This document shows positions 10,301 to 60,902 of a stretch of DNA of 64,000 bases, piece by piece. Source of the DNA: Octopus sinensis (Eukaryota). The first letter of the stretch is position 1. Every line of letters starts with the position of its first letter. Made by a program: the position numbers and the translations under genes. The notes beneath the pieces are model-generated. The model worked only from the letters and a program-made list of their open reading frames with translations. It was not told the DNA's origin and made no database searches. Location of the stretch: contig NC_043014.1 of the NCBI RefSeq assembly GCF_006345805.1, forward strand, positions 53,010,001 to 53,074,000, in the 5' to 3' direction.

Positions 10301-10450
10301 AATCTCTGTCCATTCGAAGGATCTTTAAGCTTCCAGACCCTTCTCCTCCATGCTGGTCGTCTTCTGGACATCCATTTAGCCCTGATCCTGAAGTTGCTAA
10401 CTACTAGTCTATGTTGAGAGGTACATTCTTCACCTGGGAAGTTTGACACT
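7400..10450 (-). mobile_element. About 3 kb 5'-truncated, frameshifted RTE LINE (endonuclease end, RT, 3' UTR with tandem repeats)
   Basis: ORFs 10144..10449 (QHRLVVSNF, EN end), 8875..9438 (KVPGPSGITAELLK, YRGIKLL, QFGF, AFVDMEKAFDRVPR) and 8210..8713. Also LYADDLAL at about 8755-8780. The 3' tail ends in (GAT)n at about 7405. Confidence 0.93.
9850..10139 (-). mobile_element. tRNA-derived SINE nested inside the RTE LINE
   Basis: The minus strand begins ggaggcacgtggcctagtggttagagc (A box) ... gggttcgaatcgc (B box) and contains gtgatggactggcgtcccatccagg. It interrupts the LINE at the RPKV-WW-NNVVDRA coding stretch. Confidence 0.8.
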
Positions 10451-10739
10451 CAGGAAAGTGAAAAAGTCTTTTATGTTTTGAGCCTATGCTCATCAGCAGA
10501 AAGGAATAAGAGAAAATAAACAGAGAGAGAATATACGCACACACACACGCACACACATGATGGGTTTCTTTCAATTTCTTTCTACCAAATAAATTCACAA
10601 TGCTGTGGTCAGCTGGAGGCTATAGAAAAACACCTGCCCAAGGTGCCATGCAGTGGGACTGAACCCAGAATCATGTGGTTGGGAAGCAAACTTCTCACTT
10701 CTTACCACATATATACAGCCACACACACACACACACACA

Positions 10740-12345
10740 CAAGCAGACAATGAGTGGTGTTTTGGCTTCCATATACTGACATGGAAAAAGCCTTTGACAG
10801 GGTCTCTCAAACCCTTATCTGGTAGTCAATGTGAAAACTAGGGATAGACAAGTGGTTGGTGAGAGTGGTAGAAGCTATGTACAGGGATGCTGTCAATAAG
10901 GTGAGGGTTGGCAACGAGTATAGCAATGAATGCAGGGTACAAATAGGGGTTCATCAAGAATCAATCCTCAGCCCTCTCCTGTTCATCATAGTCCTCCAAG
11001 CAATACCAGAAGAATTTAAGACAGGCTGCCCCTGGGAGATCCTCTATGCCGATGACCTTGTTATCATAGCTGAATCACTTCCAGAGAAGAAATTGCAGGT
11101 GTGGAAGCTGGGTCTAGAATCAAAGGGCCTTAGAGTTAATCTAGCAAAAACCAAAGTCTTAGGAAGTAGGAAAGCAGACAAATCACAAATCCCCTCATGT
11201 AGACGATCCTGCTCAATCTGTAGAAAAGGCATTAGTAGAAACGCATTAAGATGTACCCAGTGTAAGTTATGGACACATAAGAGATGCAGTAATATCAGAG
11301 GAAGATTAACAGAAGAAATAGTTTTTGTGTATGGAAGGTGTACAGGTACAACCAACACTGCAAATGTACAGAAGATAGACTACATCAAATGCCAGGTGGG
11401 TAAGCTAGAGGTAGTTCATAGCTTCTGCTATTTAGGTGACCAAATCACTAGTGAAGGTGGTTGCTCTGATAGCATAGCTGCAACAGTAAGAAGTGGGTGG
11501 GCAAAGTTCAGAGAGCTCCTATCTTTGTTGGTAACAAAGGGCCTCTCCCTTCTGAGTGAAAGGCAGACAGAATGATGCCTGTATGTGAAAAGCTATGCTA
11601 CATGGCATTGAAACAATGGGCTGTGACAGCCGAGGACATGTGTAGACTTGAAAGAAATGAAGTCAGTATGCTTCGTTGGATGTGTAATGTCAGTGTGCAT
11701 TAATGAGAGAGAGTGTAAGCATCTTGAGAGAAAAGTTGGGTATAAGAGGCATCAAATGTGGTGTGCAAGAGATGACTATGTTGGTATGGTCATGTGCTGC
11801 ATTTGGATGAGGACGGCTGTGTAAAGAAGTGCCGATCTTTAACTGTGGAGGGAACCTGTGGTAGAGGTAGACCCAGGAAAACATGGGATGAGGTGGTGAA
11901 GCATGATCTTCGAATGTTGAGCCTCATGGAGGTGATGACAAGTGATAGAGAGCTCTGGCAATATGGGAGAAGACACATCAGGCCAAGTGAAGTTGAGTTG
12001 TGGCTGTACCAGTCATGTGAACAGCAGCCATGTGTCGTGGTCATTGCTAGGGCCATGCAAATGGCACCTGGGAATCCTAGCCATGGTCATTCAGTGCCAG
12101 TGCCGTGTAAATGGCACCCATCCTTGAATTGTAGTTGTGAGCATTGCTGGTGGCATGGCACCCATGCTGGTGGTATGTAAAAGCACCCATTACACTCCTG
12201 CAGTGGTTGGCATTAGGAAGGGCATCCAGCTGTAGAGAGCATGCCAAATCAGACTGGGACCCGGTGCAGCTCTCTGGCTCATCAGCTCCAGCCAAACCGT
12301 CCAACCCATGCCAGCATGGAAAGCAGACGTTAAATGATGATGTTC
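10740..12345 (+). mobile_element. 5'-truncated RTE LINE (RT C-half plus 3' tail)
   Basis: ORF 10856..11575 has GVHQESILSPLLFIIV, ILYADDLVII and WAKFRELL. It continues as frameshifted WMCNV...GRGRPRKTWDEVVKHDLR, and the tail ends ...catggaaagcagacgttaaatgatgat. Confidence 0.92.
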
Positions 12346-27765: not shown

Positions 27766-29029
27766 CAGGGTGTTCCCCCCAAAAAATTTATACACTTGAG
27801 CAGCTGATAATTCAATTGATGTGTTTATTTATTTTTTTCCAGATGAAACCCAATGGAATTAATGATGGCAGATAAACTAAGCTTTGAACAAAGGAAATTC
27901 ACTCTGAAATGCTACTGGAAGTGTGAAAACGTAGTTGAAGTGCAAAGAGAGTTTAGGAGGGAGTTTCAAGCAAATCCACCAACGCGACTAACCGTCACTC
28001 GAATTAGAGATAAGTTTGAAGCCGATGGAACTGTTCAGAATGTTCATGAGAAGCATTCCAGAAGACCAAGAACAACAACAATCCCCTCAAACCAAGAAGG
28101 AGTATTGGAAAGGAATCACCAAAGTCCAAGAAAATCTGTGCAGCAAGAGAGTCGTGAGGCAGGTATTTCAAAATCTTCTGTCCAACGCATTTTGAAGCGT
28201 TGTCAATGGAAAAGTTACCTTCCAAGATTAGTCCATGCTATTAATGACGATGGTCCAGACCGAAGAGTGCAGTATTGTGAGTGGTGCTTGGTGCGATATG
28301 TAGAAGAAGCACATTTACCAAAAAAGATTGTGTGGAGGGATGAGGCCACATTCAAATTAAATGGTTCAATTAACCGCCACAATTGCACCTACTGGGGATC
28401 TGAAAATCCGCATGTTATGGTGGAACAACATGTTAATTTACCAGGAGTTACAGTGTGGTGTGGCTTATCATCAAGAGGATTAACTGGGCCATTCTTTTTT
28501 TATGCTACTCTACTTGCTCCCGTTTACTTGAACTTGCTGCAACAGTCTCTCATGCCAAGCTTTAGAGAAGACTTTGAAGATGAGGAGTTTTATTCTCAGC
28601 AAGATGGGGCACCCCCACACTACCATCGCGATGTTAGATCCTTCCTTGATGAGATCTTGCCAAACGAAGGGGTTTCATTTATTACCTGCCGTGTTCACCT
28701 GACCTCACACCACTAGACTTTTTGTGTTATGGGGATACCTAAAAGACAAAGTCTACGTTATGAAACCTGCAACAGTCACTCATTTCAGAGCAACCATTGA
28801 ACGAGAATGCATACAAATACCAAACGAATTGTTTCGTGATGTTTACGATTCTATTGCTTCACTTTGTCAGCAGTGCCTGGACCAGAATGGACGTCAGCTT
28901 GAAAACAGGCTGACAAAACAATAAATTAAGGTCTGTAGATTCTATAAAATTTCGAAAATTAAATGTATTTTAATAAACACCTACTTTACAATTATATAAA
29001 GTGTGTATACATTTTGGGGGGACACCCTG
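27766..29029 (+). mobile_element. Near full-length Tc1/mariner DNA transposon, rosa-like (DD41D inferred), transposase frameshifted near the C-terminus
   Basis: TIRs cagggtgttccccccaaaaaatttatacac (27766) and gtgtatacattttggggggacaccctg (ends 29029), with TA on both sides inside (TA)n. ORF 27853..28716 ([20 protein letters not shown]) is followed by an out-of-frame SPDLTPLDF and then ORF 28724..28924 (LWGYLKDKVY). Confidence 0.93.
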
Positions 29030-31200: not shown

Positions 31201-31598
31201 AGACAAATGAAAATATACAAAATAAAGCAATTGCCTTCGTATCATGATTTCGTTGTTAACACTTGCAAAATGCAAAATGCAAATATCTGCAACTCTTCAG
31301 CGTCGTCTGTCGCATTACAAAACATATTTCACAAAACTAAACACAGAAACGTTCACCCGAAAGAAAACGCCTTTTTACATTCTGGCGTTTTTGCTGAGAT
31401 ATTTTCTTGAGACACACTCTTCGTGGTAAAGCGATTTGACGTCTATCTTTAGCATATTAGGAATCCACTTTAGTGGTCATTTCTCTTATTAATTGTTATA
31501 TAATTTTTAAATCTTCGGATTTTTAAAAATATGCTAGACCAATAGTTTAAATTGATGGTAATTGACTGATATCAATTTCTACCCTCATTAATTAATTT

Positions 31599-31630
<32 letters not shown>

Positions 31631-32170
31631 TGTATGTATGTATGTATGTATGTATGTATGTATGTATGTATGTATGTATGTATGTATGTATGTGTGTGTG
31701 TATGTGTGTATGTGTGTATGTATGTGTGTATGTGTGTATGTGTGTGTGTGTATGTGTGTATGTGTGTATGTATGTATGTATGTATGTGTGTATGCATGCA
31801 TGTATGTATGTATGTATGTGTGTGTATGTGTGTATGTGTGTATGTATGTGTGTATGTATGTATGTATGTATGTATGTATGTATGCGTGTATGCATGTATG
31901 TATGTATGTATGTGTGTATGTATGTATGTATGTGTGGATGCATGTATGTATGTATGTATATATGTGTGGATGCATGTATGTATGTATGTATGTTTCGTAT
32001 GTATGTATGTATGTTTTGTATGTATGTATGTATGTATGTATGTATGTATGTATGTATGTATGTATGTATGTGTGTATGCATGTATGTATGTATGTATGTA
32101 TGTATGTGCGTATGCATGTATGTATGTATGTATGTATGTGTGTATGTATGTATGTATGTGTGTATGTATA
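31599..32170. repeat. Large (TATG)n/(TG)n microsatellite of about 570 bp
   Basis: Direct reading; it is the source of the 180-220 aa MYVC/HTYI ORFs in the track. Confidence 0.98.
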
Positions 32171-32305
32171 TACGAGTGAGTAGAAAAACGAAAGAAAGGT
32201 ACTCAACACATTTATTGGGAGTTACATGTATATACCGAAAGAGTTTGATTCAGACTCCTTGGTACTCTGAGTTTTAAGTGTGTGACTAGCCTTCGGCCAC
32301 TGGGG

Positions 32306-35719: not shown

Positions 35720-35819
35720 NNNNNNNNNNNNNNNNNNNNNNNNNNNNNNNNNNNNNNNNNNNNNNNNNNNNNNNNNNNNNNNNNNNNNNNNNNNNNNNNN
35801 NNNNNNNNNNNNNNNNNNN
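35720..35819. other. Assembly gap (100 N)
   Basis: Run of 100 n, flanked by simple repeats on the right. Confidence 1.
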
Positions 35820-41905: not shown

Positions 41906-44059
41906 CATAAGCTAACAAGAGAACATCCATGTGGTTACTCAGTTGGTTAGAAATAGCAGCCAAATCTCCCTCATAACCCATCATTATCGGCTTGATATCC
42001 ACTTTATTATGCTAGCATGGATCAGACAGAATTTAAGGCAGATTTTCTACAGCCAGAGCCCCTTTGTATTGTGAACCCTCAACTGTTTCTAAGCAAGGTA
42101 ATGTTTCCTAATGGCCGAACAGGTTTCGTAGGAAGATTGGAATAATGACCATCACGTGTGTAAAAGAGACGCTCGTTACCAATTATCACGTGACCCCTAG
42201 ACAAGGTGATAGAATCACACATACAACTGGCCCCTTTCAGTTTCAAATTCACTTACATGCCGTTCTTTTGTAGAGAATTATAGTAGACATCTTGTCGAAG
42301 GTGTCTCACAGAGGGATCGAACCCAGAACCATGCAGTTAGGAAGTGAACTTTCTAACACAGCCATGCCTTTACCATGACCCTACCCTAAAGAAAATTGGA
42401 AACCGGTAAGATATAGAGGATGTCTGCAATGCTGGTGGAATCCTAAACTACATCTTGGTTGGTGTTAAAAGTGATTGGTGACGAGTACAATTCAGACTAT
42501 TAAAAAAAAAGGGGGGGGCAACAAAACGGTCAGCTGTCTGTTGTAGGGTCACAATGTTGCAGGAAATGATGAACTGGAGCTGGCCCCAACCAATCCATAC
42601 TCACTGCAACAAGCTCCATTCCCCCACCCACCGACTTGAAATGATGACAAAATGTCTATTTAAACCTTCTGGTTCTAACCTGTCTGACACCGACAACCGA
42701 TTCTATGCTATAAAACTTCCTGCTTAAAATTATCTTGATTACAATCTTCCATTAAAGTTCCATGTCAATTTATATTCCAAGCACCAGCTTAATGACAAAA
42801 GTTATTCTGCCAAATTCCCTTTTAAATTTTCAGAATCAATTTAAACAAAGGAATCACTAAAAGATTCAAAGAAACATCTTATAAGAAAATACTCTTCAAA
42901 TCGTTTCTCTTAATTCTTGTACTACAAACACTATCAATTAATCTTTCATTTTACTTTTATTTTAAAGTCAGTCATGAGGGGAGAGGTTTTGCCCATATCC
43001 TGAAGACTTCACAGCCAACACCAAACACTGCAACGTATTCAATGAAAAACTTCAAATTTTGCAACAAATGGCATTTTTAAAGTCTTTTACTCAGATTTCT
43101 CAAATGTCCCCATCCTCCAGTCTTAATGTCCTTTCCACCACATTTTACATTAATCAGCCAACCACCAAATAAGGACTCCTTCCGTGACTAGCAAAACCAT
43201 CTCACTCCCCCTCCTGGCAATCTACCCAATTGTAGGGTCCCTCCCTTCCTTACTAATCTGGTCTTCTTCACCCCCATGCTTGCTCTGGACCTTTCTCTCA
43301 TACTCCTATTTTCTAGCATAAGGCTATCACCTCTGTTCAGGTTCGAAGTCTTGCAAGCCACATGACAACCTCATTAGTGTTGATTGCAGGAAAGAAAGTA
43401 CCCAGGACCCATGGTTGGCATTGCGAAAGGCCATAGAAACCATGCCTTAGCAGACACCGTCACATGATGCAATCCTTGAGCCCAGTGGACCCTATCAAAC
43501 CGTCCAACCCATGGCAGCAAGGAACAAGCAAGTTAAGTGATTATTAGACCAGGGAGTTGGCGGAATTGTTAGCAAACCAAACAAGAACTATAGAAACATT
43601 TTGTCTGTCTTTGTATTCTAAATTCAAATTGCTGAGGTCGACTTTGCCTTTCCTCCTTTTAGGGTCAATATCAGTCGAGCACTAGGGTCAATGCAATCGA
43701 CTAGACCGTCACCTTACCCTCCAAAATATCAGTCCTTGTTCCTATACTCATCATCATTTAACATCCACCCTCCATGCTGGCACAGGGTGGATGGTTTGAC
43801 ATGAAGCTATCCAGACCCCCAACTGTTTGTTGTGAGATGAGAATTATTAAAAAGGGGCTGAACTGGCTGATTTGTTAGAACTTTGGACAAAATGCATTTC
43901 TTTCAGCCCTTGGCATTCTCAGCTCAAATTCCACCAACCATGACTGTAGTCTACTGACCACAAAAGGGTGAAAGATAAAGCATCAGTTGAATGCTGGGGT
44001 CGTAACTGATTTTCCCACCTCTCTCAAAATTATTATTAGTGAAATTTAATAAAAATAGA

Positions 44060-44797
44060 AACAAGAAGAAAAAGTTTGATAAGTTTATTTCAAAAAAAGT
44101 TGGAAAATGGAATTAAAGAAAAAAAAGAAACAGAAATTAGCTTTTAATTTGTAAGTCGTTTAATTTTCTTGATTTATTTTCTATGAAAACTGCAGCAAAA
44201 AGTGAAAGAATGAAAAGTTTGTTTCTTAAAAATAATTAAAAAAAAAAGGCACCAGATGGTTTGAAGAGAAAATAATTTTGTTTTGTTTAACGAAAGCAAG
44301 TTACGTTGTGTTTGTTCGTGATTAACAACCACTGGAAGGCAATAATTCCATTTCTTGTCACATTTGCAGATATTAAATTATGATAGAAAAATAATAATAC
44401 ACAGACAAAGGTATTTGTCAGGTAAATTAAAGAGATTTTGTTGAAATAAACCAGCAAAAATCAGAAAAGAAAGAAATACAGAAATAAAAGACGAATTTCG
44501 TTGAAGTGTGAGAGGAAAAAAAAGATGTAATGACATGCAGAGAGAGAAGAGAAGAAGATTTAAGATGGGGCTAGAATAAGAACTAATTATAATTAAAATA
44601 ATGAGGAGGAGGAGGAGGCAAGAAAGCAATGGCTAGCAATAATAAAAAAAAAAAAGTTTCCCCACCCCCCTACTTCATCTTCTGAAGAATTCATCCTTAA
44701 TGTGGAAGGTTAAGGTGTCTCGAGAAATTCTCTCAAAAGATTTGCCAACCCAGAGAAGAAGAAGAAAGAGAAATAAAATGTGAAGAAGCCAGCCATC
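44060..44797 (-). promoter_or_regulatory. Probable 3' UTR of the thymosin gene with candidate polyadenylation signals
   Basis: U-rich on the minus strand and free of obvious repeats. AATAAA on the minus strand at 44089-44084 and 44178-44173; a SINE begins just beyond (about 44040). The exact 3' end is unknown. Confidence 0.5.
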
Positions 44798-44826
44798 TTA
44801 AGCAGAGCCTTTTTCTTGAGCAATAT
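44798..44826 (-). CDS. Beta-thymosin repeat gene, terminal coding exon
   Basis: Acceptor ctattttcttttcag|. Encodes (D)IAQEKGSA-stop (TAA at 44800-44798), completing the C-terminal helix of repeat 4, and is followed by U-rich UTR-like sequence. Confidence 0.9.
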
Positions 44827-47800
44827 CTGAAAAGAAAATAGAAAGTTTATAGAAAACGGAAGAAATTTCACAAACAAATAAAACAATAAACTGACGCCAG
44901 ATAAAAACACACCATTTTGTCTTTATAAAAAAAATAATCCAAGTTTTTCCACCCCCACCCACCAGAATGGTTTCTGTAATAAGTGGAATACAGCTGCTAT
45001 TTCTAGCAAGAGACAACTATTTCTCTATGGATTCCTGCCATCCTGAGGAGGCTTTCCACAGCAAACTTGTTCTGCTTTTCCCCCAAAAAGCACCACCATG
45101 GGCCGCAAACTCTTTCCTTGCTTTATTACTTTTTTGAACTTCTGATACTACAACAGTCACAAGTTTTCTCAGGTCCCAGTTAGACAAACCCTAGCCCGAC
45201 CCCTCTTCCTGATTTCTTCACTGTTTGGGGCTGGGGGTCCTTTCTGACCGCTCAGGACATTCAGTGCTTAACAAGAAGGTACGCAAACACACACGCACAT
45301 CCAAACTCGTCCGTTTTACAGCCAGATGCCTTTCCTCCTACTAACCCTTCCCTTATTTGAGTGAGGGATCGCATTACACACAGCTTCAAAGGGACAAAGA
45401 GCCAAAAACAATTTGTTGACAACAACACACAACACTTTTATACAAACAAATGCAGAAAAAAAACACCCAAACACATGAAAGTCTTCTTTCGGTTTTGCCG
45501 ACCAAATCCACTCCAAAGGGCTTGGTCGGCCCAGGGCTATAGCAGAGAACTCTTGTTCGCGGTGGGATTGAGCCTGTAACCATGTGGTTGGAAAGTGACC
45601 CTTGGCAACCGTACAGCTATGCTTAACACCTTATTCCAGTTCTAAATCGATTTCATTCGTCGATCCATTTGCTGACACAGAGCTTCAGAGTTGCCTCCCC
45701 TCGCTCTTTAATCTTTCTCACAACACGTGACACTGACTAATGACGGGTTTTCTTTTTCTTTATTGAATAAGAGAAATGTATCGGCACCGATTATTAAAAT
45801 CAGTTTGTGCCCAAGAAAAGGAAGAAAAAAAAACTGTCAGCTGCAAAAATGCCAAACAACTTTCACTTGTCAAACAAACTGAACGAAAAACCAAAAAAAA
45901 ACCCGAACTCACCGGCCTTGGTTGGCAAAACGGTTTTCTCACAAGTCTTTGTGCATTTCAACTCAGTTTTGTCAAACTTGTTGATGGAATTCTTCAGTTC
46001 TTGCTCAGTTTTTTCTTGTTTAATTGCTAAAGAAAAATTTCAGATCATTAAAGTATCTCCACGTAAACACAAACTGTGAACAGCAAAACATACAAGAAAT
46101 ATCAGTTTCTAATATAAACAGATTTCACTTTAAAAACCAGTAAAGTGCCATTTTATCATCGGAGTCCATCTGGCATCTACTTTCCGACAGCCGGATGCCC
46201 TTCCTGTCACCAACCTTCACTCGTTTCCAAGCAAGGTAACAGGTTTCTCCCAGGACCAGATAGGTTTCCACAACAGATTGCAAACACTGCAATTCTATGA
46301 AGGCGATGTCTCTTTACAATTAGCAAACGACAAGACAACACACAGATGTATATCTTGCTTGGAAACAAGGGTTGGCAACAGGAAAGGCATCCAGCAAGAG
46401 AAATCCTGTCTCACTGAATCCCATCTGACCCATTCAAGCACGGAAAAACAGAATGATAATAACAGGGTATGGTTGAAGGAATGTGTGCCTGCTTGTTATG
46501 AGATCCTGGGATGGTTTGAAATGAATGCCACCATCAGATGATGATACTCATATCCAGACTTCTATGAAAAACAGGTTTGGGCATAGGAAAGTAATGATGA
46601 TGATAACTATAAGCAATCACTTACTGTCTTTGTCTGGAAGCGGGTTCTTCTCCTCCACTTCAGCATGTTTTAGTTGGTTCTTATCAAAATCGTTAATATT
46701 GCTTCGTAGTTTTTGTTCCGTCTTCTCTTGGTCGATTTCTAAATGTAAAGAAAAAAATTAAAATTAGAAAAGAAAAACAGAAACCAAGTCACTTTGGAGG
46801 GGGGGGGGAGTCTATTTACAAACACAGAAACAAAAAACACTTTTTTTCTAGATTCCATTCAGTTTATTTGAATTCATCAAAATATTTTAATATCTTTTTC
46901 AAAATATAAGTTCCTTTGTCATATTTGTTCTGGAGAGGTGGGGGGGAGGGCCCATTTGGGTGGAAACTGCAGAAAGTGGACGACTGCCAAAGTCAGTCAT
47001 TTCAAAATTTCATATTCAACCCAAACAACAGACAAAAGCATTTTGTTAAGTACCAAAGCCTTTTGTTGTCTAATTATGACTCGGCCACGACAAACACTGA
47101 AACTCTTTATGACAGAAGCTGTTGGCCGCTTCTTGTTATGTTTTGGCACAAATTATTTATTCACACCTACATTCTACAAGAACTGGCTTCTTTACAGACT
47201 TGGAAACTTGGAAACTTGTTTAAAAACAAAACAGCAAACAAGAAAAGCTGAGAGAGGAGGGGGGGGGGTGAATGACTAAGTACAACAATACAATTGTTTT
47301 AATTGCTTATGCAACCATTATCGTTAGTAAAACAGTCAAAGTGTGGCAAAAATAAATTTAATTCTTTCTCATTAAGAATTAATCCGTGATGAAAGATTTC
47401 TGACAATTAACTGGAAGATAACAGAGTCCAAGAAAAATCTGTGGTGATGGTCAGCAACCACAAAAAATTGACTTAGTTTTGTAAATTTCGATAAAGTTGT
47501 ATGGAATGGAGAGAATCTTTATTTCCAAGAAATGATTTTAGTCAGAAAGGATGTTTTTATGAAAGAAATTCTCCATCAAAGAAAAACTTCAACAGATTTG
47601 AAGTAAATTATTTTCACAAGAATTTAGAAAGTCATAAGTAAATAAAACTTAAAAGTTTAGAAAATTGGGCCCAGGTGTGGCTGAGTATACCTGCCAACCA
47701 CATGGTTCCAGGCTCAGTTCCACTGAGTGACACCTTGGGCAAGTGTCTTCTACTATAACCTTGTGAGTAGAATTGGTAGATGGAAACTGAAAGAAGCCTG

Positions 47801-50621
47801 TCACGTGTGTGCATGCACCCCCCCCCCCCCCACTGCTTGACAACTGGTGTTGATGCGTTTGTCCCCATAACTTAGGTTTTTTGAAGCCTGGTACTTTATC
47901 AGTCTCTTGCCAAATTGCTAAGTGCTGGGGTCAGTAGGTGCTCCAGCATGGCCAGCACAGTCTAATGACAAACAAGAGACAGAAAAGATGAAAGATCTTA
48001 GAATTTTTGCTGGCAAAAAGAAAAGGCTTCTAAAATGGAGGACATTTGAAGTGTTGCTATGGTGATCTGAAAACCCACCAAAATTTCTGTTGCAAACACC
48101 AGGCAAATAATGTCAAGGCTAATTTGATGAAGTTCTTTGTTATTTTCAAAATTAATTACAACAAAGTTTATTCCAACAGAAATGTGGTAAGAGCCATTTT
48201 TGCGGCTGAACTGGACAAAGCCATTCCTAAAGCTGTCTTGGTACATGAACAATAAGAACAGAAACAAATGACTGCTTTGTTGACAAAGCTACAACGCCAT
48301 GGACAATGCAAATGTCTTTGAATGGTTAATAAGAAGGTAAATCATCCTTTCATGAATTTAGTAGAGAAAAATCTTCACAAAAATCTGTTTCCACATCAAA
48401 TACAGACTCACCTTTCTGTCACCTGAAAATGAAATTTACAAGATTCACTGGCAAAGTGCAAGAGATTCCCAAAGAATTTGTATTTGGAGAAAGTTTACAA
48501 GAATCACATTAAATGTTGATTGACCTGAAAGGAAATACTAAATCTATTGAGGTTTTCAGGACAAACCCACCACAAGTGCACAATAAAGGGCAAAATGTGT
48601 TCCAAATAACCATGCTGCAGATTTAGGGAAATCTGCAAATGTGCACACACATGTGTGAATAATGCACTCAATTGTGCAGTTTGTGTGCATAATGTTGGTA
48701 TAAATCTACATTGACAAAAACAGGCAAACATTCAACCAGAGAAATCTCCCTTAGGCCAAACGTCATTCTACTATTTAAGACCCAACCAATGTCTAATAAT
48801 AGGGACCAGGCAATTCAACTTGGCCGGTCGAATAATTACAATACAAAATAGTCTGCAAAAGATTAATCTTTTTCTCAAATTCAATAGCTTGTCCTTTTAA
48901 CTATATTAACCGTTCTGATACCCACTGAAGTCCACCCGGTTCTAAGATACACACTGCCTGTTTTTAAATTAATTTAATTCTAGGTTGATGTTTAGAATAT
49001 AAATTTAATATGGTTTTACTAAATCATTCGTTATTTCTAAAATAGATCTCATGAGCCAAAACCTTACATAAACCAATAAGTCAAAACACTACCAGAATTT
49101 TCTTCTACAGTGGATAGATGTGCAAGTCAGAAAAACTATGCATTAAAAGTTCATAATTTATCATTTTTTTTTTTTATAGAAATCATTCCGGAACCAATCT
49201 TCTCTAAACCTTCTCAAAACCTATCTTCATTTGTAACTCATTAAGTTATACATCTAGTTAATTAGCTTCCAATTATAGGAAGGCGATAACATTCTCACAT
49301 CAAACTTTAAAATGTTTTTTTTTAACTCTTAAGTAAATTTCAGGAGTTATAACTTCATATTCTCAAGAAATCAATTATATTTGGATAAAAACAGAATTAT
49401 ATGACAGATGTTTTGTAATTTAGACATAAAACAAAACAACAAAAGCAGCTTTAAAGGAGAAAATGGCTTTTTGAGATTTAGACAAGTTTTTAGGGTGAAG
49501 GGTTTGAGGACAGATTAAAATTTGTGTGACTTATTAAGACCAAGAAATACAACAAACGAAGATTCATCAAATATTTAAAAGGGTCCAGTTTGATGTAACA
49601 AAATACAATTAAATATAAATTAATCACATTTACAAAATTAAATCAATTTAAATCTACAAAATTAAATCAATTTTGTGATGGAAGGAGGATAAGAGTACAT
49701 CTTTAGTGGGTGGGGGTACATATTTCTGCAGGGAAAGGAAATGTTCTGCTCCAGAGTTTGGCGTTCTAGAAAAAAAAAGGAGAAAAAAAAGAAAAGAAAA
49801 AAAAACAGAAAAAAAGAAATCTCTAAAAGCTGTTAGTAACAACTTGAGTTAGTTTGAACGAAAACTATAAGCAACCGTTTAAGTATGAACAAACACAAAA
49901 AAGGGACCAGATTGGAAGGAGAGCCTGGTTTATTGATCGATTCATTCACCCTGTATACCCACCCACCCACCCAAGCTGACAACACTAAACCTACTTTTGA
50001 TACAATGTATAACAAAAGTCTGTCTCTGCATTCACAAACAAGGACAGCAGTCAATGTTAAGAATGACTATCACACACACACACACACACACACGGTAACA
50101 AGGAACTAGAGTCAGCAATGGTTTGAAGTCGACCCCTGAAGACTTCATATTACAACCATATGTGTGTGTTTTATATACAACACCACACATCTTGTTATAT
50201 CAATTCGCAAAAGAGATGATGATTAAATGATACAAAAATGTTGAGGCAGGGGGCAAGAGAAGATCCCTCTCACTCAGCATTTCGGGCTGCCACCCCCTTA
50301 ACACCCAGGCCACATTCCTAGCACCACCACCCCACCAACCAACCCTCACAAACACAGACCCCTTTCTGAAGCAAATCCAAAGCAACTGGATTTCACAAAT
50401 AAAACTTAACCTAATGAACCCCTTATTTTGTCGTTTTTACATGAATCGCGACCCCATTATCGCCCCACTTCTCTTCAAGGTCACCTTGGAACTTTCCACT
50501 GTCCCTAGTGGGGGCAATACCATCCACTTTGGGAACCATTGCCTAACTCATGCCAAAAAGAGAAAATGTCAACTTGTAGACATAAATACAAAAAGGAGAC
50601 AAAAAGATTAGCCTTCTTATG

Positions 50622-50672
<51 letters not shown>

Positions 50673-53600
50673 TTGTGTTTGTGTTTGTGTTTGTGTGTGT
50701 GTGTGTGTGTTTGTGTGTTTGTGTGTTTGTGTGTTTGTGTGTTTGTGTGTTTGTGTGTTTGTGTGTTTGTGTGTTTGTGTGTGTGTAAAATCACGAACAA
50801 TGAGCATCAAAATGATTACTTTCACATATTTTTGATACAACCCATGCCAGCATGGAAAGCGGACATTAAACGATGATGATGATTCTGGAAGACCTGAATG
50901 TGTCCAGAAGACACAAGGGACTCTGAAACACCTCTGTTTCAACATTGCTGTCTTCTCAGGCAAAGGAGACCCCAAACTAATGGCTAACAAGAGCTCAGGG
51001 CTCCTGTTTGCTGATGCGTGTCTGATGTGAAATGGTGAAAGCCAGTTGCTGTTACATACTGAAAAGTCTCTTAGTAAGCTGTTAGTAACTAGAAACACAC
51101 AAGTTTAGTAATTAGAAAAATACCAACTCAAAGCTAAGGTTAGTAAGAAACACTGAGGGTTATTCAGCAACATTTTAAGCACAAAAACAAATCTATTCAG
51201 TTATTTGTTTGTCCACCCAACTGCATGAAGCATGGTTAAGACTTTCTGCCCATGACCAACCTGTCTTGTCAGGTAAGCTTATTTTCTCTTGGGTTTCAGT
51301 TGGGTTAAGTTTTGCTTTGTCAAAACTACCGATGGAGCTGCGCAACTCTTGCTCACTTTTCTCTTTGACAATATCTAAGGAAAAAAGACAACAATAAAAA
51401 CAAAAAATAGAAAAACAAAGACATCTGAGAAAGGATTGCTGGTGGCAGTGACTGAAGGAACCAAAAGATTAAAGAATGATGGGAGGCAAAAACTGACAAT
51501 GAAAGTCATTATTCTCATCACTCAAATTATTACTCATCACTTTTAAGCACAATTAAAAACACAAATCTATTCAGTTGTTGGTCGACCCAATTGCATGAAA
51601 CATGCCTCAGCACATGGTTAAGTCTTTCTGCCCATGACCAACATGTCTTGTCAACAGATAAGGCTATTTTCCAGTCATATCTTTCTGCAGATTATTTCTT
51701 AAATTGAAATCGTTTTTTTTTTTTCCAATTTTTAGAAAAGAATCTACAAAAAGCATTTGGTTGAAACCTGGTGGATCAGCAGCAAAAGAAATAAATTGGT
51801 CAGGGTCAGCAAGTTTCTCAGCCAAAAGCAAGTGCTACTTGGTCAAGCAGTGAGGGCTGGGGACATTGCAGGACTGATTATCAGTCAGGGTTTACTGGAA
51901 TTAAGAGGATTATCTGCTTGAATTAAGGGGATTATCTGCCAGTCAGATTCCTTGAATGACAATCTCTACATGGTCATCCATACTTGCTAAAAATAGCAGT
52001 CAAATCTTCCAACTCACACCATCCACCAAACATTAAGTTCACAGCTGAATGATTGTGGTTGGTCAACATGGCCAACGCAGCCTGTGGTCATTCAAAATGC
52101 TAGAAATAGCAGCTGCAAATCTCCATTAAATCATATTCTGCTATCTTAAAAAAGACAAGGACACGTTGGAAAATGTAGACTTATATGTCTGTAAAGAAGT
52201 GAAAGTCATGGCTGGATTGTCTAGTCAGTATAGTTAACTCCTGATAGACTTAGAAATGAATAAAGATGAAGTCTTCAAATGATATTTCACAACTTAAAGG
52301 GTTATGGAGGCTCCCTGTTATATGGGGGGGGGGGGTTAAAAGAAACATGATAAGCCCCAGGTGAACTTTGATTGAATAAGCCTAGGATCAAAGCAACCCG
52401 ACCATGACCTTCCCATCATTTCTAGGAATATCTAGAACTAGATCATCTAACGGCTCCAATATTGTTCGATTTGAGGAGAGATTTGACTTATTTCTTTGAG
52501 GTGAAAACTTTAAGAAATCTGAATCAAGAATTTTATTTTCGTTCTGGGAATAAACCAGAGAAGCACTCAAGACCGGGTTTCCTGTGGCTCTGGAATCCAT
52601 TCTACATGGAGAAAACAAGGAAATTAATGGACGACTTGGTCAGTTGCCAAAGTATTGCAGCTACAGAATTGTCAACCAGTGAAAATGTATCCGGTTATAA
52701 ATCTGACCAATGTGCTTGTCACCATGACAACAGTGAAGCTGACGGATGCAGACAAAACCCGTGTTTTGTTTGTCTTCAAGGTTTTAATGTCTCCTCTTTA
52801 AAAAAAAAGACACTTCATTGCATAATTATTTCTATAAATAGTTTCTACATCAAACACACGATGAAGCAGTTCTGCTGTGACCACAAGAAAGGAGCCTCTA
52901 TAACATGGCTTCATGCTAGAAATAGTCAGCTATCTCTCCTTCAAATTAGTCTCATCATAAAAAGGAAGCTCGAGTTGTGATTATGTGGCCCTTAATAGAG
53001 AATAGGGTTGTTTGATGATGGTTAATCTGGGACTAAAACAACAGCTATGATCCCTTAAGGTGGTTACTCAAATGGCCTATAATAGCACCCAAATCTCCCT
53101 CAAAATACTCTCCTACAGCCTTGAGAAAATTGAAGACCACAGCCTTACACACACGTGAGAAAGAGAGAGAGAGAGAAACAAAAAGCAGGATCATAACTGC
53201 AACAGCTGATGAGATCAGCTTTAAGGAAGTTAACCTAGGGTTAAACAAAAGCAACAGTATGGTAGTGTTGGCAAGGATATTCAGCTTGCCCCTCCATGGC
53301 CACTCCATTTGCTAAGCTGCCATTTCCAGGGAGGCAAAGAGGGAATAGAATCAGCAAAGACTAAAATGTCATCCAAAGTCTTCTGTCCACCATTGAAAGA
53401 ATTCCACATCTTTTTGACAATCTCATCCATTTGCATTTTGGTGAGGCAAAATTAAATCATTTCTCTGGGATTTTTCTTGCAGTTTATGGCCAGAATTGTT
53501 ACAGCAGACAAAGTATTTTGTACTAATGGTTTTGTTTGCCTACATGTGAGTTCAAATCCAGTTGGGGTCAATGAAATAAAAATACCAATCTGTTTATTAC

Positions 53601-54311
53601 CAGAGTCAAGTTTATACCCCTCCCCTCAAATGTAGTCTGGTTCTTTGTGTTTTTTGGCTTTGAATGCCAGAAGAATGAAAAGCCAAGTTGACTTCAGTGG
53701 GATTCAAGGGTTTAAAAAAAAAAGAAAGAAAAAGGACCATTCAAGAGATTAATAAAATCAATGTCCTCCCACCCCTCCAAAACGTGGGTATGACCCTTGC
53801 CAGACCCCTGTTTCTGCTCTTCAACCGAGGAAGGATACAGTTTCTAGCGTCCTAGGCAAAGTAACTTGACTTTAAGGACCAGATTTCATTTTCCCATCAT
53901 GCAGTGGGCAGAAGTCCCAACCAAACAAGGACATCTGCCAGTCAGGCATTCGAAAGACAGCAAAAGAGGGACCAGGCTTACAAAAGAAAAAAAGAGAAAA
54001 TGGGGCCAATTTGTTTGGTTAAGTCCGTTTCAAGGCACTGCTCCAGCATGGCTGTAATCCAATGACTGAAACAAGTGAAAGAGTAAAAGAAAACCATTCA
54101 TTTCCCTCCCCCCCCCACCTCCCCACAGCCATTCCACTTTTCAGACCCTTAAAAAGATAAAAGAGAAAAAAAGGGGGGTGGGTTAATTTTTACCAGTTTT
54201 CGTCGGAAGAGCAGTCTTCTCCTGAACGTCGATGTGTTGCAGGTCGTCCTTCTTGGTGGTTTTGATTTCATCCAAGAATGGTCGGGGAGCAGTAGTGGTG
54301 GTGGTGGTCAT
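44798..54311 (-). CDS. Multi-repeat beta-thymosin (four beta-thymosin/WH2 repeats; ciboulot/tetrathymosin/Csp24-like), spliced CDS, 162 aa
   Basis: Manual splice on the minus strand: join(54311..54194, 51374..51261, 46738..46625, 46026..45913, 44826..44798) = 118+114+114+114+29 = 489 nt. All introns are GT-AG and the frame is open to TAA. Protein: MTTTTTTAPRPFLDEIKTTKKDDLQHIDVQEKTALPTKT DIVKEKSEQELRSSIGSFDKAKLNPTETQEKISLPDKT EIDQEKTEQKLRSNINDFDKNQLKHAEVEEKNPLPDKD TIKQEKTEQELKNSINKFDKTELKCTKTCEKTVLPTKA DIAQEKGSA. It matches the beta-thymosin pattern FDKxxLKxTETxEKNPLPxKExIxQEK four times. Confidence 0.93.
45913..46026 (-). CDS. Beta-thymosin repeat gene, coding exon 4 (114 nt, phase 1-1)
   Basis: Acceptor tttttctttag|, donor |gtgagt. 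Encodes (T)IKQEKTEQELKNSINKFDKTELKCTKTCEKTVLPTKA. Confidence 0.94.
46625..46738 (-). CDS. Beta-thymosin repeat gene, coding exon 3 (114 nt, phase 1-1)
   Basis: Acceptor tttttttctttacatttag|, donor |gtaagt. Encodes (E)IDQEKTEQKLRSNINDFDKNQLKHAEVEEKNPLPDKD. Confidence 0.95.
48040..48560 (+). mobile_element. Possible old hAT/BED-type transposase relic in thymosin intron 2
   Basis: Broken frames FVDKA, NVFEWL, NHPFMNLVEK and QEIPKEFVF resemble the W.....n.Pf..vE ... eLP..F region of hAT transposases. Recognised from memory of motifs only. Confidence 0.3.
50628..50786. repeat. (GT)n/(GTGTTT)n microsatellite in thymosin intron 2
   Basis: Direct reading. Other large simple repeats: (GA)n 6813-6879, (TA)n 7276-7390, 22016-22109 and 22555-22650, (CT)n 24535-24658, (TACA)(TA)n 27370-27496, (ATT)n 29892-29941, (CTA)n 39147-39190, (GT)n 61272-61430. 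Confidence 0.95.
51261..51374 (-). CDS. Beta-thymosin repeat gene, coding exon 2 (114 nt, phase 1-1)
   Basis: Acceptor gtcttttttccttag|, donor |gttggt. Encodes (D)IVKEKSEQELRSSIGSFDKAKLNPTETQEKISLPDKT. Confidence 0.92.
54194..54311 (-). CDS. Beta-thymosin repeat gene, first coding exon (ATG at 54311; repeat 1)
   Basis: Acceptor tttatatttgaag| (exon starts 54328), 17 nt of 5' UTR, then ATG. Encodes MTTTTTTAPRPFLDEIKTTKKDDLQHIDVQEKTALPTKT+g; donor |gtaaaa. An upstream non-coding exon is implied but was not located. Confidence 0.88.
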
Positions 54312-55349
54312 CTTGGAATTTAAAAGGCCTTCAAATATAAAAAGACATTAATTACCAAAGTTCATTAGTTAATACGATTATCGTTTGTTACTCATTTAAA
54401 TATCTTCCAGCTGCATGGGACTTGTGGCTGCAAGCATCATGGGAAAAAGAAGGGAATTGTTTATTTAGAAAAAAGAAATTAGTAAAAATAAAAAGATTGT
54501 TTAGAAGAGAGGAAATGAGAAAAGCAGAGCTAAAAGAAAAAACAAAAAAAGGGAATCATTTGGAAAAGAAGAATTTTTAATTAATGATGAAGAGGAGGAC
54601 AGTGTTATCAAATGCAGATGGACAGGAGCAAAATTATACTTGGCAAGATTACTGCCGCCAATACCTTTTCCAACAAGTAAGGTGTGGTTGAAGGGAATTT
54701 TAGCTGCTATTTCTAATATGCTGTGGGCATATGGCGTGGTGGTTAAGAGTGCAGGCTACTAACCCCAAGATTTCGAGTTCAATTCCAAAAACTGTTGGAA
54801 TGTATTTGTGTTGAGAAAGATTAAGAGGAATCTTAGGTATCATCAGTGTTTTACATCCACTTTACCCTGCTGGCATGGGTTGGAAGTTTTACAAAACACT
54901 TCAGTCAAATTCCCAACCTCCCACCAACACTCAGCTTCCTCTTCCAGGAATGCAACGTATTTGGAATCTGACACAACTGGAACAAACAAATGAAATATTT
55001 CATCCAAAAGAATTTAAACCAAATTTTTTTCTTTTTTTTACCTTGTTTAAAAAGCTGAATTTTCAAGTCACCTGACCTGCTAAAAATTAGCCAAAATCTC
55101 CCTCAAACCGTTTCCAATAACAATAAAAAGCAAATGGATGCATTGAATAAGGTAATTAAGGAAATATTGTGAGGAAATAACATAGGATTGTCATGGTTGG
55201 AATGATTTAATCATAAGTCCTTACAAAGTTAAAAGTAGGTCAGCTTCACCAGAAATGATCAACTAAATTTCCTATCAAGCGGGACACCTTCAACTACCAC
55301 ACAAACACACCTCTTCCTCTGCAAATGCACAAATATATGAAGAGGTGCC

Positions 55350-60056: not shown

Positions 60057-60396
60057 ACCCTCACCGTCACTTGACAGCCAGTGTTGGTTTGTTTACATTA
60101 CTATAACTTAGTGGTTCAGCAAAAGAGATTGATAGAATAAGTAATAAGTAAAAAGTACTGGTATTGACTAAACACTTCAAGAGGGGGTGCTCCAGCATGG
60201 TCGCAATCCAATGACTGAAACAAGTAAAAGATTAAAAATCCAGGGAAAGAACAGCATGATAGAAAAAGAAAAAAAAAAGGAGTGGTTTAATGAGAGGAGG
60301 GGGAAGTGGTGGTGAGAGATTGTTATTTAAGGATGGGCAAAACAATAACAAAAGTCTCTCTCCTCTTCCTCCCACTTCCTCAGTGAATGTAAGTGC

Positions 60397-60612
<216 letters not shown>

Positions 60613-60902
60613 GAACCAACCAACTTCACTAGAAACTTCTATTTTCCACACAGGATGTTGTGTGTTGGGTGGGAGTGGATTTAAGCTGATAGAATTGAGA
60701 TAAGGAGAGAAAGAGAGAAAAGTTAATGGAGCAGTGGTGGTGGCCACAGGAGGGGGGGGGCGGAGAGGGGGGGGGAAGAGTTAAAGTTTTTTTTAAAATC
60801 TACTTTTATAATCAGAAGAATCTTTGTGTTGGTTTACATCTCTCCTTTGGCAATGAAGGCCATGGATGGAGGGGGGGAGACATGCTTTGCCTCCGGCTTC
60901 AG

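What the first reader, a model, noticed from the sequence alone, without database searches (positions are those of the whole stretch)
44798..54311. Hidden four-repeat beta-thymosin gene built from equal-length, same-phase exons
Seen: five short exons, too short to appear as ORFs in the track, splice into a 162-aa protein with four beta-thymosin/WH2 repeats. The three internal exons are each 114 nt and phase 1-1. Known: multi-repeat thymosins (Drosophila ciboulot, C. elegans TTH-1, Hermissenda Csp24) act on actin assembly differently from single-repeat sequestering Tb4, and Csp24 was linked to conditioning in a mollusc. Inference: any combination of exons 2-4 can be skipped in frame, giving 1- to 4-repeat isoforms that could tune G-actin sequestration versus filament growth, for example in cephalopod neurons.
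Basis: partly seen in the sequence, partly recalled or inferred. Interest (0 to 1): 0.75.

Follow-up and report, generated by a model that had tools for sequence, protein, structure and literature searches.

The report
Octopus four-repeat beta-thymosin gene
The window holds a real, intact octopus gene for a small actin-binding protein with four beta-thymosin repeats, but building such a gene from equal 114-base skippable exons is already documented in insects and crustaceans, so it is a new member of a known kind.

Summary
Five minus-strand exons (118, 114, 114, 114 and 29 nt), all with AG/GT borders and phase-1 introns, splice into a 162-aa protein. It has four Pfam Thymosin repeats (E = 4.6e-37), and each repeat alone passes Pfam's cut-off. 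A profile built only from other species' proteins finds exactly these four exons in the window and nothing else. The window is Octopus sinensis chromosome CM016876.1. Exon 1, its donor site and a TATA-bearing promoter block are conserved in a related genome, with mostly synonymous change. The gene is therefore real and under selection.

All eight exon-skipping products stay in frame, but no transcript data could be reached, so real isoforms remain untested.

The architecture is not new. Termite, cockroach and silkworm thymosin genes have the same 114-bp repeat exons with proven exon skipping. Crayfish makes one- to five-repeat forms. The sequestering-versus-assembly isoform idea was published for termite in 2010.

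The one mildly new point is that no orthologue from any annotated cephalopod appeared in the protein collections, although Octopus vulgaris and O. bimaculoides proteins are held there. The gene may be missing from octopus catalogues.

Verdict: real, ordinary, low-to-moderate interest.

The parts
54194..54311 (-). Exon 1 coding part (118 nt). It holds the ATG, a Thr run, and repeat 1's N-terminal helix, LQHI motif and linker (MTTTTTTAPRPFLDEIKTTKKDDLQHIDVQEKTALPTKT + G of the split codon).
   Evidence: There is an in-frame TAA 13 codons upstream of the ATG. Orthologous exon in L001-L003: 10 synonymous versus 6 non-synonymous codon changes, an in-frame 6-nt indel and a conserved GGTAAAAAT donor.
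51261..51374 (-). Exon 2, 114 nt, phase 1-1. It holds the C-terminal helix of repeat 1 (IVKEK) plus repeat 2's helix, LNPT motif and linker.
   Evidence: Acceptor ttttttccttag, donor GTTGGT.
46625..46738 (-). Exon 3, 114 nt, phase 1-1. It holds the C-terminal helix of repeat 2 (IDQEK) plus repeat 3 with the canonical LKHA motif and EEKNPLPDKD linker.
   Evidence: 46.7 bits, the best repeat. It aligns to Tβ4/ciboulot chimeras solved on actin. Donor GTAAGT.
45913..46026 (-). Exon 4, 114 nt, phase 1-1. It holds the C-terminal helix of repeat 3 (IKQEK) plus repeat 4, whose motif LKCTKTCEK contains two cysteines.
   Evidence: Donor GTGAGT.
44798..44826 (-). Exon 5 coding part: 26 nt plus TAA. It holds the C-terminal helix of the last repeat ((D)IAQEKGSA*).
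   Evidence: It has the same 26-nt coding length as the last exon reported for the cockroach gene (PMC6801668).
54351..54432 (-). Putative core promoter and start of the 5' UTR. This conserved block includes a TATA-like TATTTAAA at 54403-54396, about 92 nt upstream of the ATG.
   Evidence: The block is 88% identical to L001, against 71-73% in the flanking upstream and intron sequence. The promoter function itself is inferred.
44050..44797 (-). Putative 3' UTR with poly(A) signals: AATAAA at 44178-44173 and 44089-44084, and ATTAAA at 44164, 44148 and 44050.
   Evidence: The assignment is inferred, with no transcript evidence.

Best explanation
This is the Octopus sinensis gene for a multirepeat beta-thymosin, of the ciboulot / tetrathymosin / Csp24 kind. 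It lies on the minus strand at CM016876.1:53,054,798-53,064,311. The product is a 162-aa, cysteine-poor and probably disordered protein with four beta-thymosin/WH2 repeats that bind actin monomers.

Shown: the intact spliced ORF, four Pfam-grade repeats, canonical splice sites, purifying selection on exon 1, a conserved TATA-bearing promoter block, and no further repeat exons.

Also shown: each intron sits inside a repeat, in phase 1, between the linker (..EKxxLPxKx) and the C-terminal helix (xIxQEK). Each 114-nt exon therefore carries the tail helix of one repeat and the head (helix, LKKT-type motif, linker) of the next. Joining any two exons rebuilds a complete repeat. This makes all eight skipping products in frame and domain-complete.

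Inferred from family knowledge: the protein binds G-actin through each head helix and motif. Like ciboulot and tetrathymosin, it feeds monomers to barbed ends rather than only sequestering them.

Inferred by analogy with termite, cockroach, silkworm, crayfish and thrips: at least one of exons 2-4 is skipped in some tissues, giving three-repeat or shorter isoforms.
For: - Gene model and frame.
- Pfam Thymosin with four stretches at E = 4.6e-37; each repeat alone is above the cut-off.
- Solved Tβ4/ciboulot-actin structures are the best PDB sequence matches.
- The alignment with human Tβ4 keeps I9, K14, L17, E24, K25, L28, P29, K31, I34, E37 and K38 in all four repeats.
- An independent profile finds exactly four hits, well above the shuffles.
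- Exon 1 orthologue in a related genome: 10 synonymous versus 6 non-synonymous codon changes, an in-frame indel, a conserved donor, and a promoter block at 88% against flanks at 71-73%.
- The three internal exons are only 20/37 identical to each other at the protein level, and each is at least as similar to a repeat in another species. Their introns do not align. The repeats are therefore old and individually maintained.
- The same 114-nt phase-1 AG..GT repeat exons occur three times on an unrelated genomic contig, L006.
- Published precedents for 114-bp exons and exon skipping: PMC2896938, PMC6801668, PMC4608725 and PMC3614969.
- NCBI's thrips isoforms X2 and X5 differ by exactly 38 aa.
Against: - There is no transcript or protein evidence for this octopus gene. 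None of the eight isoform sequences is in the collection, and no cephalopod orthologue protein was returned.
- Only repeat 3 has a canonical motif (LKHA). Repeats 1, 2 and 4 read LQHI, LNPT and LKCT, so the number of actin monomers bound may be below four.
- All four donors match the splice-donor consensus (recalled, CAG|GTAAGT) at 6-8 of 9 positions by eye (sites). The sequence gives no hint of which exon, if any, is alternative.
- C. elegans tetrathymosin is an example of a four-repeat form studied as one protein.
Confidence: 0.85

Rival explanations
1. The gene is real but constitutively spliced. Only the four-repeat 162-aa protein is made, and the equal-length same-phase exons are just the inherited footprint of exon duplication.
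For: No isoform sequence was found in any collection. All splice sites look normal, with none markedly weak. Symmetrical exons are the expected by-product of tandem exon duplication, whether or not skipping is used.
Against: Every arthropod gene with this architecture that has been examined yields skipped isoforms. The thrips X2 and X5 isoforms differ by one 38-aa unit. Hermissenda has 4- and 5-repeat forms, Csp24/29, as cited in PMC2896938.
Confidence: 0.3
2. This is the first reader's strong version: fully combinatorial splicing. All subsets of exons 2-4 are used, and one- to four-repeat isoforms tune sequestration against filament growth in neurons.
For: All eight products are in frame and stop-free, and each rebuilds whole repeats. 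Crayfish expresses one-, two-, three- and five-repeat forms, with the one-repeat form dominant in brain (PMC3614969).
Against: The published cases use a few isoforms, not all combinations. The octopus one-repeat product would carry the weakest repeat, with LQHI and 27.5 bits. There are no expression data.
Confidence: 0.12
3. It is a decaying or silent gene copy (pseudogene), or a chance assembly of thymosin-like ORF fragments.
For: It is absent from the annotated cephalopod protein sets reachable here.
Against: The 162-codon frame runs intact across eight canonical splice sites. Four Pfam-grade repeats are present. The shuffle control reaches 12 bits at most, against 18-51 bits observed. Exon 1 changes mostly synonymously, and the promoter block is conserved.
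Confidence: 0.03

Closest known systems
Termite HsjCib (Hodotermopsis sjostedti ciboulot homologue; PMC2896938)
   Same: It is a multirepeat beta-thymosin/WH2 protein from a single gene. Its internal exons are each 114 bp (38 aa), with exon junctions in the middle of the repeat, so that spliced halves form a whole domain. Exon skipping gives 5-, 4- and 3-repeat isoforms, predicted to differ between sequestering and assembly-promoting.
   Different: It has five repeats rather than four and comes from an insect. Its isoforms are shown by cDNA, northern and western analysis, whereas nothing is shown for octopus.
Cockroach Pa-THY and silkworm BmTHY genes (PMC6801668, PMC4608725)
   Same: Exon plan: cockroach 139 / 114 x4 / 26 bp and silkworm 145 / 114 / 114 / 140 bp. 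The last coding exon of 26 nt is identical in length to the octopus one. Skipping of 114-bp exons is demonstrated.
   Different: The repeat numbers differ (5 and 3). These are arthropods, studied for wound healing and immunity rather than for neurons.
Crayfish Pl-beta-thymosin 1-5 (PMC3614969)
   Same: One gene is inferred to give one- to five-repeat proteins by alternative splicing. The one-repeat form joins the first and last exons and dominates in brain, haematopoietic tissue and haemocytes. It also has an LKHA-type motif in an internal repeat.
   Different: The crayfish first repeat has a canonical LKKT, whereas octopus has LQHI. Crayfish also uses an alternative terminal exon.
Drosophila ciboulot, C. 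elegans tetrathymosin beta, Hermissenda Csp24/Csp29
   Same: They are multirepeat beta-thymosins with 3, 4 and 4/5 repeats (listed in PMC2896938). The best PDB sequence matches are ciboulot/Tβ4 constructs. Csp24 is the molluscan four-repeat member.
   Different: No sequence of Csp24 or tetrathymosin was compared here, so orthology to Csp24 is untested. The link to learning rests on the Hermissenda literature (own knowledge), not on anything in this window.
Vertebrate thymosin beta-4
   Same: It has the same repeat unit. The octopus repeats are 35-50% identical to it, and 11 positions are invariant across Tβ4 and all four repeats. The predicted exon 1 + exon 5 product (48 aa) has the size and layout of Tβ4.
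   Different: Tβ4 has a single repeat with a canonical LKKT and acts as a sequestering protein. The octopus gene has four repeats and lacks LKKT in repeat 1.

Membership tests
Beta-thymosin family (Pfam PF01290 Thymosin) | Match to the family profile above the curated cut-off | tested here: met
   The whole protein scores 125.9 bits, E = 4.6e-37, in 4 stretches. Each repeat alone scores 27.5, 40.5, 46.7 and 42.7 bits against a cut-off of 24.8.
Beta-thymosin family (Pfam PF01290 Thymosin) | Central LKKT-type actin-binding motif (LKKT, LKHA, LKHT, LKNA) in each repeat | tested here: inconclusive
   The motifs are LKHA in repeat 3, LKCT in repeat 4, LNPT in repeat 2 and LQHI in repeat 1. The leucine is invariant, but the basic residues are kept fully only in repeat 3. 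LQHI is conserved in the related genome (P0008).
Beta-thymosin family (Pfam PF01290 Thymosin) | Head helix with spaced hydrophobic residues, an xxEKxxLP linker, and an xIxxEK tail helix | tested here: met
   Columns I9, L17, E24, K25, L28, P29, K31, I34, E37 and K38 (Tβ4 numbering) are invariant in all four repeats and Tβ4.
Beta-thymosin family (Pfam PF01290 Thymosin) | Binds monomeric actin | not testable with these tools
   This needs recombinant protein and actin-binding or polymerisation assays.
Invertebrate multirepeat beta-thymosin genes with modular exons (HsjCib / Pa-THY / BmTHY type) | Two or more tandem repeats in one polypeptide | tested here: met
   There are four repeats.
Invertebrate multirepeat beta-thymosin genes with modular exons (HsjCib / Pa-THY / BmTHY type) | Internal repeat exons of 114 nt, with introns inside the repeat and in the same phase | tested here: met
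   There are three 114-nt phase 1-1 exons and a final coding exon of 26 nt, matching the published 114-bp and 26-bp exons. The same design is seen on contig L006.
Invertebrate multirepeat beta-thymosin genes with modular exons (HsjCib / Pa-THY / BmTHY type) | Exon-skipping isoforms with fewer repeats are actually expressed | not testable with these tools
   All skips are in frame, but no isoform sequence is in the collection and no octopus transcript data were reachable.
Csp24 orthologue (Hermissenda conditioned-stimulus-pathway phosphoprotein) | Sequence orthology to Csp24, and phosphorylation linked to conditioning | not tested
   No Csp24 sequence was retrieved. Only the repeat number (4) and the phylum agree (for the repeat count).

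The most novel reading that the evidence does not exclude
An abundant actin regulator is missing from current octopus gene catalogues because its exons are too small for gene finders, so expression atlases built on those catalogues are blind to it. In octopus it would be spliced combinatorially by tissue. Its unusual repeat 4, with two cysteines inside the actin-contact motif (LKCTKTCEK), would add redox control of actin binding that is not known for beta-thymosins.
Probability: 0.08. Interest if true: 0.5.

Novelty: new member of a known kind. Interest (0 to 1): 0.25.

Why it matters
Scientifically it adds a cephalopod member to a well-described family. It shows that the 114-nt phase-1 repeat-exon design, down to the 26-nt last coding exon, is shared between insects and a mollusc. 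The design therefore probably predates their common ancestor.

Practically, the gene appears to be absent from the annotated octopus protein sets I could reach. If that holds in the current RefSeq and community annotations, a probably highly expressed cytoskeletal gene is being missed in octopus transcriptome and single-cell studies, and it is easy to add.

The isoform question is cheap to answer with existing public Iso-Seq and RNA-seq data. It does not open a long-standing problem.

Tried and rejected
I used the exon-1 read-through ORF instead. It found one orthologue (P0008) and three distant or unrelated repeat proteins.
- An exact look-up of all eight isoforms found none.
- The look-up of encoding contigs found nothing on record for the 42-aa exon-1 ORF or for the thrips protein P0001, so I could not check the thrips exon sizes on DNA.
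- Searching the papers for the SRA run prefix, to name the species behind P0008, gave only an unrelated hit. That species stays unknown.
- The word 'thymosin' is absent from the held supplementary files of the octopus brain cell atlas. This is consistent with the gene being unannotated, but it is not proof.
- The Lymnaea neurite beta-thymosin paper (PMC6674307) is not held.
- The multi-term cephalopod literature search was swamped by unrelated papers.
- I looked for extra or decayed repeat exons in the introns and elsewhere in the window and found none.
- I looked for recent duplication among exons 2-4 and rejected it: the exon DNA is only loosely alike and the introns are unalignable.
- I looked for RNA genes and tRNAs in the window and found none.
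- I considered using splice-site strength to predict the alternative exon and rejected it, because all four donors match the recalled consensus at 6-8 of 9 positions.
- I did not predict a structure, because the family is intrinsically disordered off actin.
Full report
**What is there**

- 54311-54194 (118 nt, starting at the ATG)
- 51374-51261 (114 nt)
- 46738-46625 (114 nt)
- 46026-45913 (114 nt)
- 44826-44798 (26 nt plus TAA)

Each acceptor is a pyrimidine tract ending in AG. Each donor begins with GT: GTAAAA, GTTGGT, GTAAGT and GTGAGT. The joined CDS is 489 nt and encodes 162 aa. Exon 1 ends one base into a codon, and each internal exon is 2 + 111 + 1 nt. An in-frame TAA lies 13 codons upstream of the ATG. 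AATAAA signals lie 620 and 709 nt after the stop.

**Is it more than chance?**

- Pfam Thymosin (PF01290) matches four stretches at E = 4.6e-37.
- Each repeat submitted alone passes the curated cut-off, at 27.5, 40.5, 46.7 and 42.7 bits against 24.8.
- To avoid circularity I built a profile from 35 repeats cut from proteins of other species and scanned all stop-to-stop ORFs of the window. The four exons score 51, 49, 42 and 18 bits. The next hit scores 6 bits, and the best hit in 20 block-shuffled windows was 12 bits.
- The same scan shows there are no extra or decayed repeat exons in the introns or elsewhere in the 64 kb.

**Where the window comes from**

An intact 287-aa transposase ORF at 27853-28716 is on record at CM016876.1:53,037,853-53,038,716 of assembly GCA_006345805.1. 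The O. vulgaris genome paper names this assembly as Octopus sinensis. The offset places the gene at CM016876.1:53,054,798-53,064,311 on the minus strand.

**Evidence that the gene is alive**

The only orthologue found in the protein collections is P0008. It is an ORF call on short genomic contigs from three sequencing runs (L001-L003) that reads from the same ATG through exon 1 into the intron.

The DNA of L001 aligns to the window across about 900 bp.
- In exon 1 there are 10 synonymous and 6 non-synonymous codon differences, plus an in-frame 6-nt indel in the Thr run. The donor GGTAAAAAT is kept.
- An 82-nt block upstream (54432-54351) is 88% identical, against 71-73% for the surrounding upstream and intron sequence. 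It contains TATTTAAA about 92 nt before the ATG.

This pattern indicates purifying selection on a transcribed, translated first exon with its own promoter. The promoter and UTR assignments are inferences.

**Anatomy and how it would work**

Each intron falls between the linker (..EKxxLPxKx) and the tail helix (xIxQEK) of a repeat. An internal exon is therefore not one repeat. It is the tail helix of repeat n plus the head helix, LKKT-type motif and linker of repeat n+1. Any exon-exon join rebuilds a complete repeat. I generated all eight products of skipping exons 2-4 (48, 86 x3, 124 x3 and 162 aa), and all are in frame with a single terminal stop.

Aligned with human thymosin beta-4, the four repeats are 35, 50, 48 and 44% identical. 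Eleven positions are invariant across Tβ4 and all four repeats: I9, K14, L17, E24, K25, L28, P29, K31, I34, E37 and K38.

The best matches among solved structures are thymosin beta-4/ciboulot chimeras, thymosin beta-9, ciboulot and an actin-thymosin fusion.

The central motif is canonical only in repeat 3 (LKHA). Repeat 4 has LKCT followed by a second cysteine (LKCTKTCEK), repeat 2 has LNPT and repeat 1 has LQHI. The related genome also has LQHI.

From established knowledge of the family (own knowledge: ciboulot, tetrathymosin, Tβ4), the likely function is binding of actin monomers, with delivery to barbed ends rather than pure sequestration. The degenerate motifs mean the stoichiometry may be lower than four.

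**Age of the repeats**

- Exons 2-4 are only 20/37 identical to one another at the protein level.
- Each is as close or closer to a repeat in another species, at 24-25/37 to L006 or P0002 repeats.
- Their flanking introns do not align.

The duplication is therefore ancient, and the repeats have kept separate identities.

**Comparison with what is known**

This is where the finding loses novelty.
- Termite HsjCib has exons 2-5 of 114 bp each, junctions in the middle of the WH2 domain so that spliced halves form a whole domain, isoforms with 5, 4 and 3 repeats, and a prediction that isoforms differ between sequestering and assembly-promoting (PMC2896938).
- The cockroach gene has exons of 139, 114 x4 and 26 bp, with three skip isoforms (PMC6801668).
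- The silkworm gene has exons of 145, 114, 114 and 140 bp, with one skip isoform (PMC4608725).
- Crayfish cDNAs give one- to five-repeat forms. The one-repeat form joins the first and last exons and dominates in brain and blood-forming tissue (PMC3614969).

My own results add three points.
- Thrips isoforms X2 and X5, as named by NCBI, differ by exactly one 38-aa unit.
- An unrelated genomic contig of unknown species (L006) carries three consecutive 114-nt AG..GT phase-1 repeat exons.
- The octopus last coding exon, at 26 nt, equals the cockroach one.

In molluscs, Hermissenda Csp24/29 with 4/5 repeats (cited) and a 41-aa single-repeat pearl-oyster form (PMC12108687) are on record. MolluscDB lists a beta-thymosin orthogroup with 23 sequences in 21 of its mollusc datasets (PMC8059625).

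**Is it 'hidden'?**

- The full-length search returned no cephalopod protein other than the P0008 ORF call.
- None of the eight isoform sequences is in the collection.
- An exhaustive search with exon 1 found only P0008 as an orthologue. Its next hit is a multi-repeat hypothetical protein of the gastropod Batillaria.
- As a positive control, the transposase ORF retrieved annotated proteins of Octopus vulgaris (99% identical) and O. bimaculoides. Annotated octopus proteomes are therefore held in the collection.
- The word 'thymosin' is also absent from the held supplementary files of the octopus brain atlas.

Together this suggests, but does not prove, that the gene is missing from current octopus gene sets.

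**What remains untested**

Whether any skipped isoform exists in octopus could not be addressed, because no octopus transcript data are reachable with these tools. By eye, the four donors match the splice-donor consensus (recalled, CAG|GTAAGT) at 6-8 of 9 positions, so the sequence does not point to a particular alternative exon.

On the precedent of every examined arthropod gene of this design, I put about 0.6 on at least one skip isoform. I put about 0.1 on truly combinatorial use. The predicted one-repeat product carries the weakest repeat (LQHI), which argues against a simple Tβ4-like sequestering role for it.

**Surroundings**

The rest of the window is repeat-rich.
- Reverse-transcriptase fragments with a PHD-like finger at 8.2-12.2 kb on both strands.
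- A DUF4817/Tc1-like transposase at 27.9-28.7 kb.
- Long microsatellites.
- A 100-N gap at 35720-35819.
- No Rfam family and no tRNA.

No other cellular gene was recognised, though genes with tiny exons could escape my ORF-based look.

**Verdict**

The splicing inference is plausible but untested, and it is already standard for this family. It is a new member of a known kind, with a possible annotation gap as the only practical news. Interest 0.25.

Noticed in passing
window 27853-28716 (+): An intact 287-aa ORF of a DUF4817/Tc1-like transposase. It is 99% identical to an annotated 'hypothetical predicted protein' of Octopus vulgaris. It is also 69-76% identical to 353-aa transposases from a sea spider (Pycnogonum litorale) and unnamed environmental contigs, and 61% to a horseshoe crab protein. 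It looks like a widely shared, possibly horizontally spread, element, and the copy here is shorter than the 353-aa family length.
   Followed up: partly
window 45913-46026 (-), repeat 4: There are two cysteines inside the actin-contact motif (LKCTKTCEK, a C-x3-C spacing), where other repeats have LKH/K-T-E-T-Q-EK. Cysteine is rare in this family. Whether these cysteines are conserved in other cephalopods could not be checked.
   Followed up: no
window 54194-54311 (-), repeat 1; protein P0019: The head of repeat 1 (PRPFLDEIKTTKKDDL) resembles the classical WH2 repeats of an unnamed 464-aa protein (PRSFLDEIAAFKKDSLKP, four copies) found by the exhaustive search. The LQHI motif replacing LKKT is conserved in the related genome.
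   Followed up: partly
window 54351-54432 (-): An 82-nt block upstream of the ATG is 88% identical to the related genome, against about 71-73% in the flanks. It contains TATTTAAA and is probably the core promoter and transcription start.
   Followed up: partly
L006:191-304, 1160-1273, 2743-2856: A 3-kb genomic contig from run ERR13986128 (species unknown) carries three consecutive thymosin repeat exons. Each is exactly 114 nt, bounded by AG and GT, and in phase 1. The middle one shares IVKEK...SF...EKISLP with octopus exon 2.
   Followed up: partly
window 8210-12180, both strands: Fragments of a non-LTR retrotransposon: a reverse-transcriptase domain followed by a PHD/C1-like zinc finger. They are present in two copies in opposite orientation, at 8210-9438 (-) and 10856-12180 (+).
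   Followed up: no
window 31572-32277, 60232-60747, 50628-50786, 35720-35819: Long microsatellite arrays give spurious ORFs of 170-220 aa in several frames. There is also a 100-N assembly gap at 35720-35819.
   Followed up: no
L004 (Tara Oceans run ERR1712121), protein P0002: A 1449-nt contig, most likely a transcript, encodes a 121-aa three-repeat thymosin that is 58% identical to the octopus protein and ends in ..ADIEKEKSGA. It is the closest full-length relative found. The organism is unknown.
   Followed up: partly
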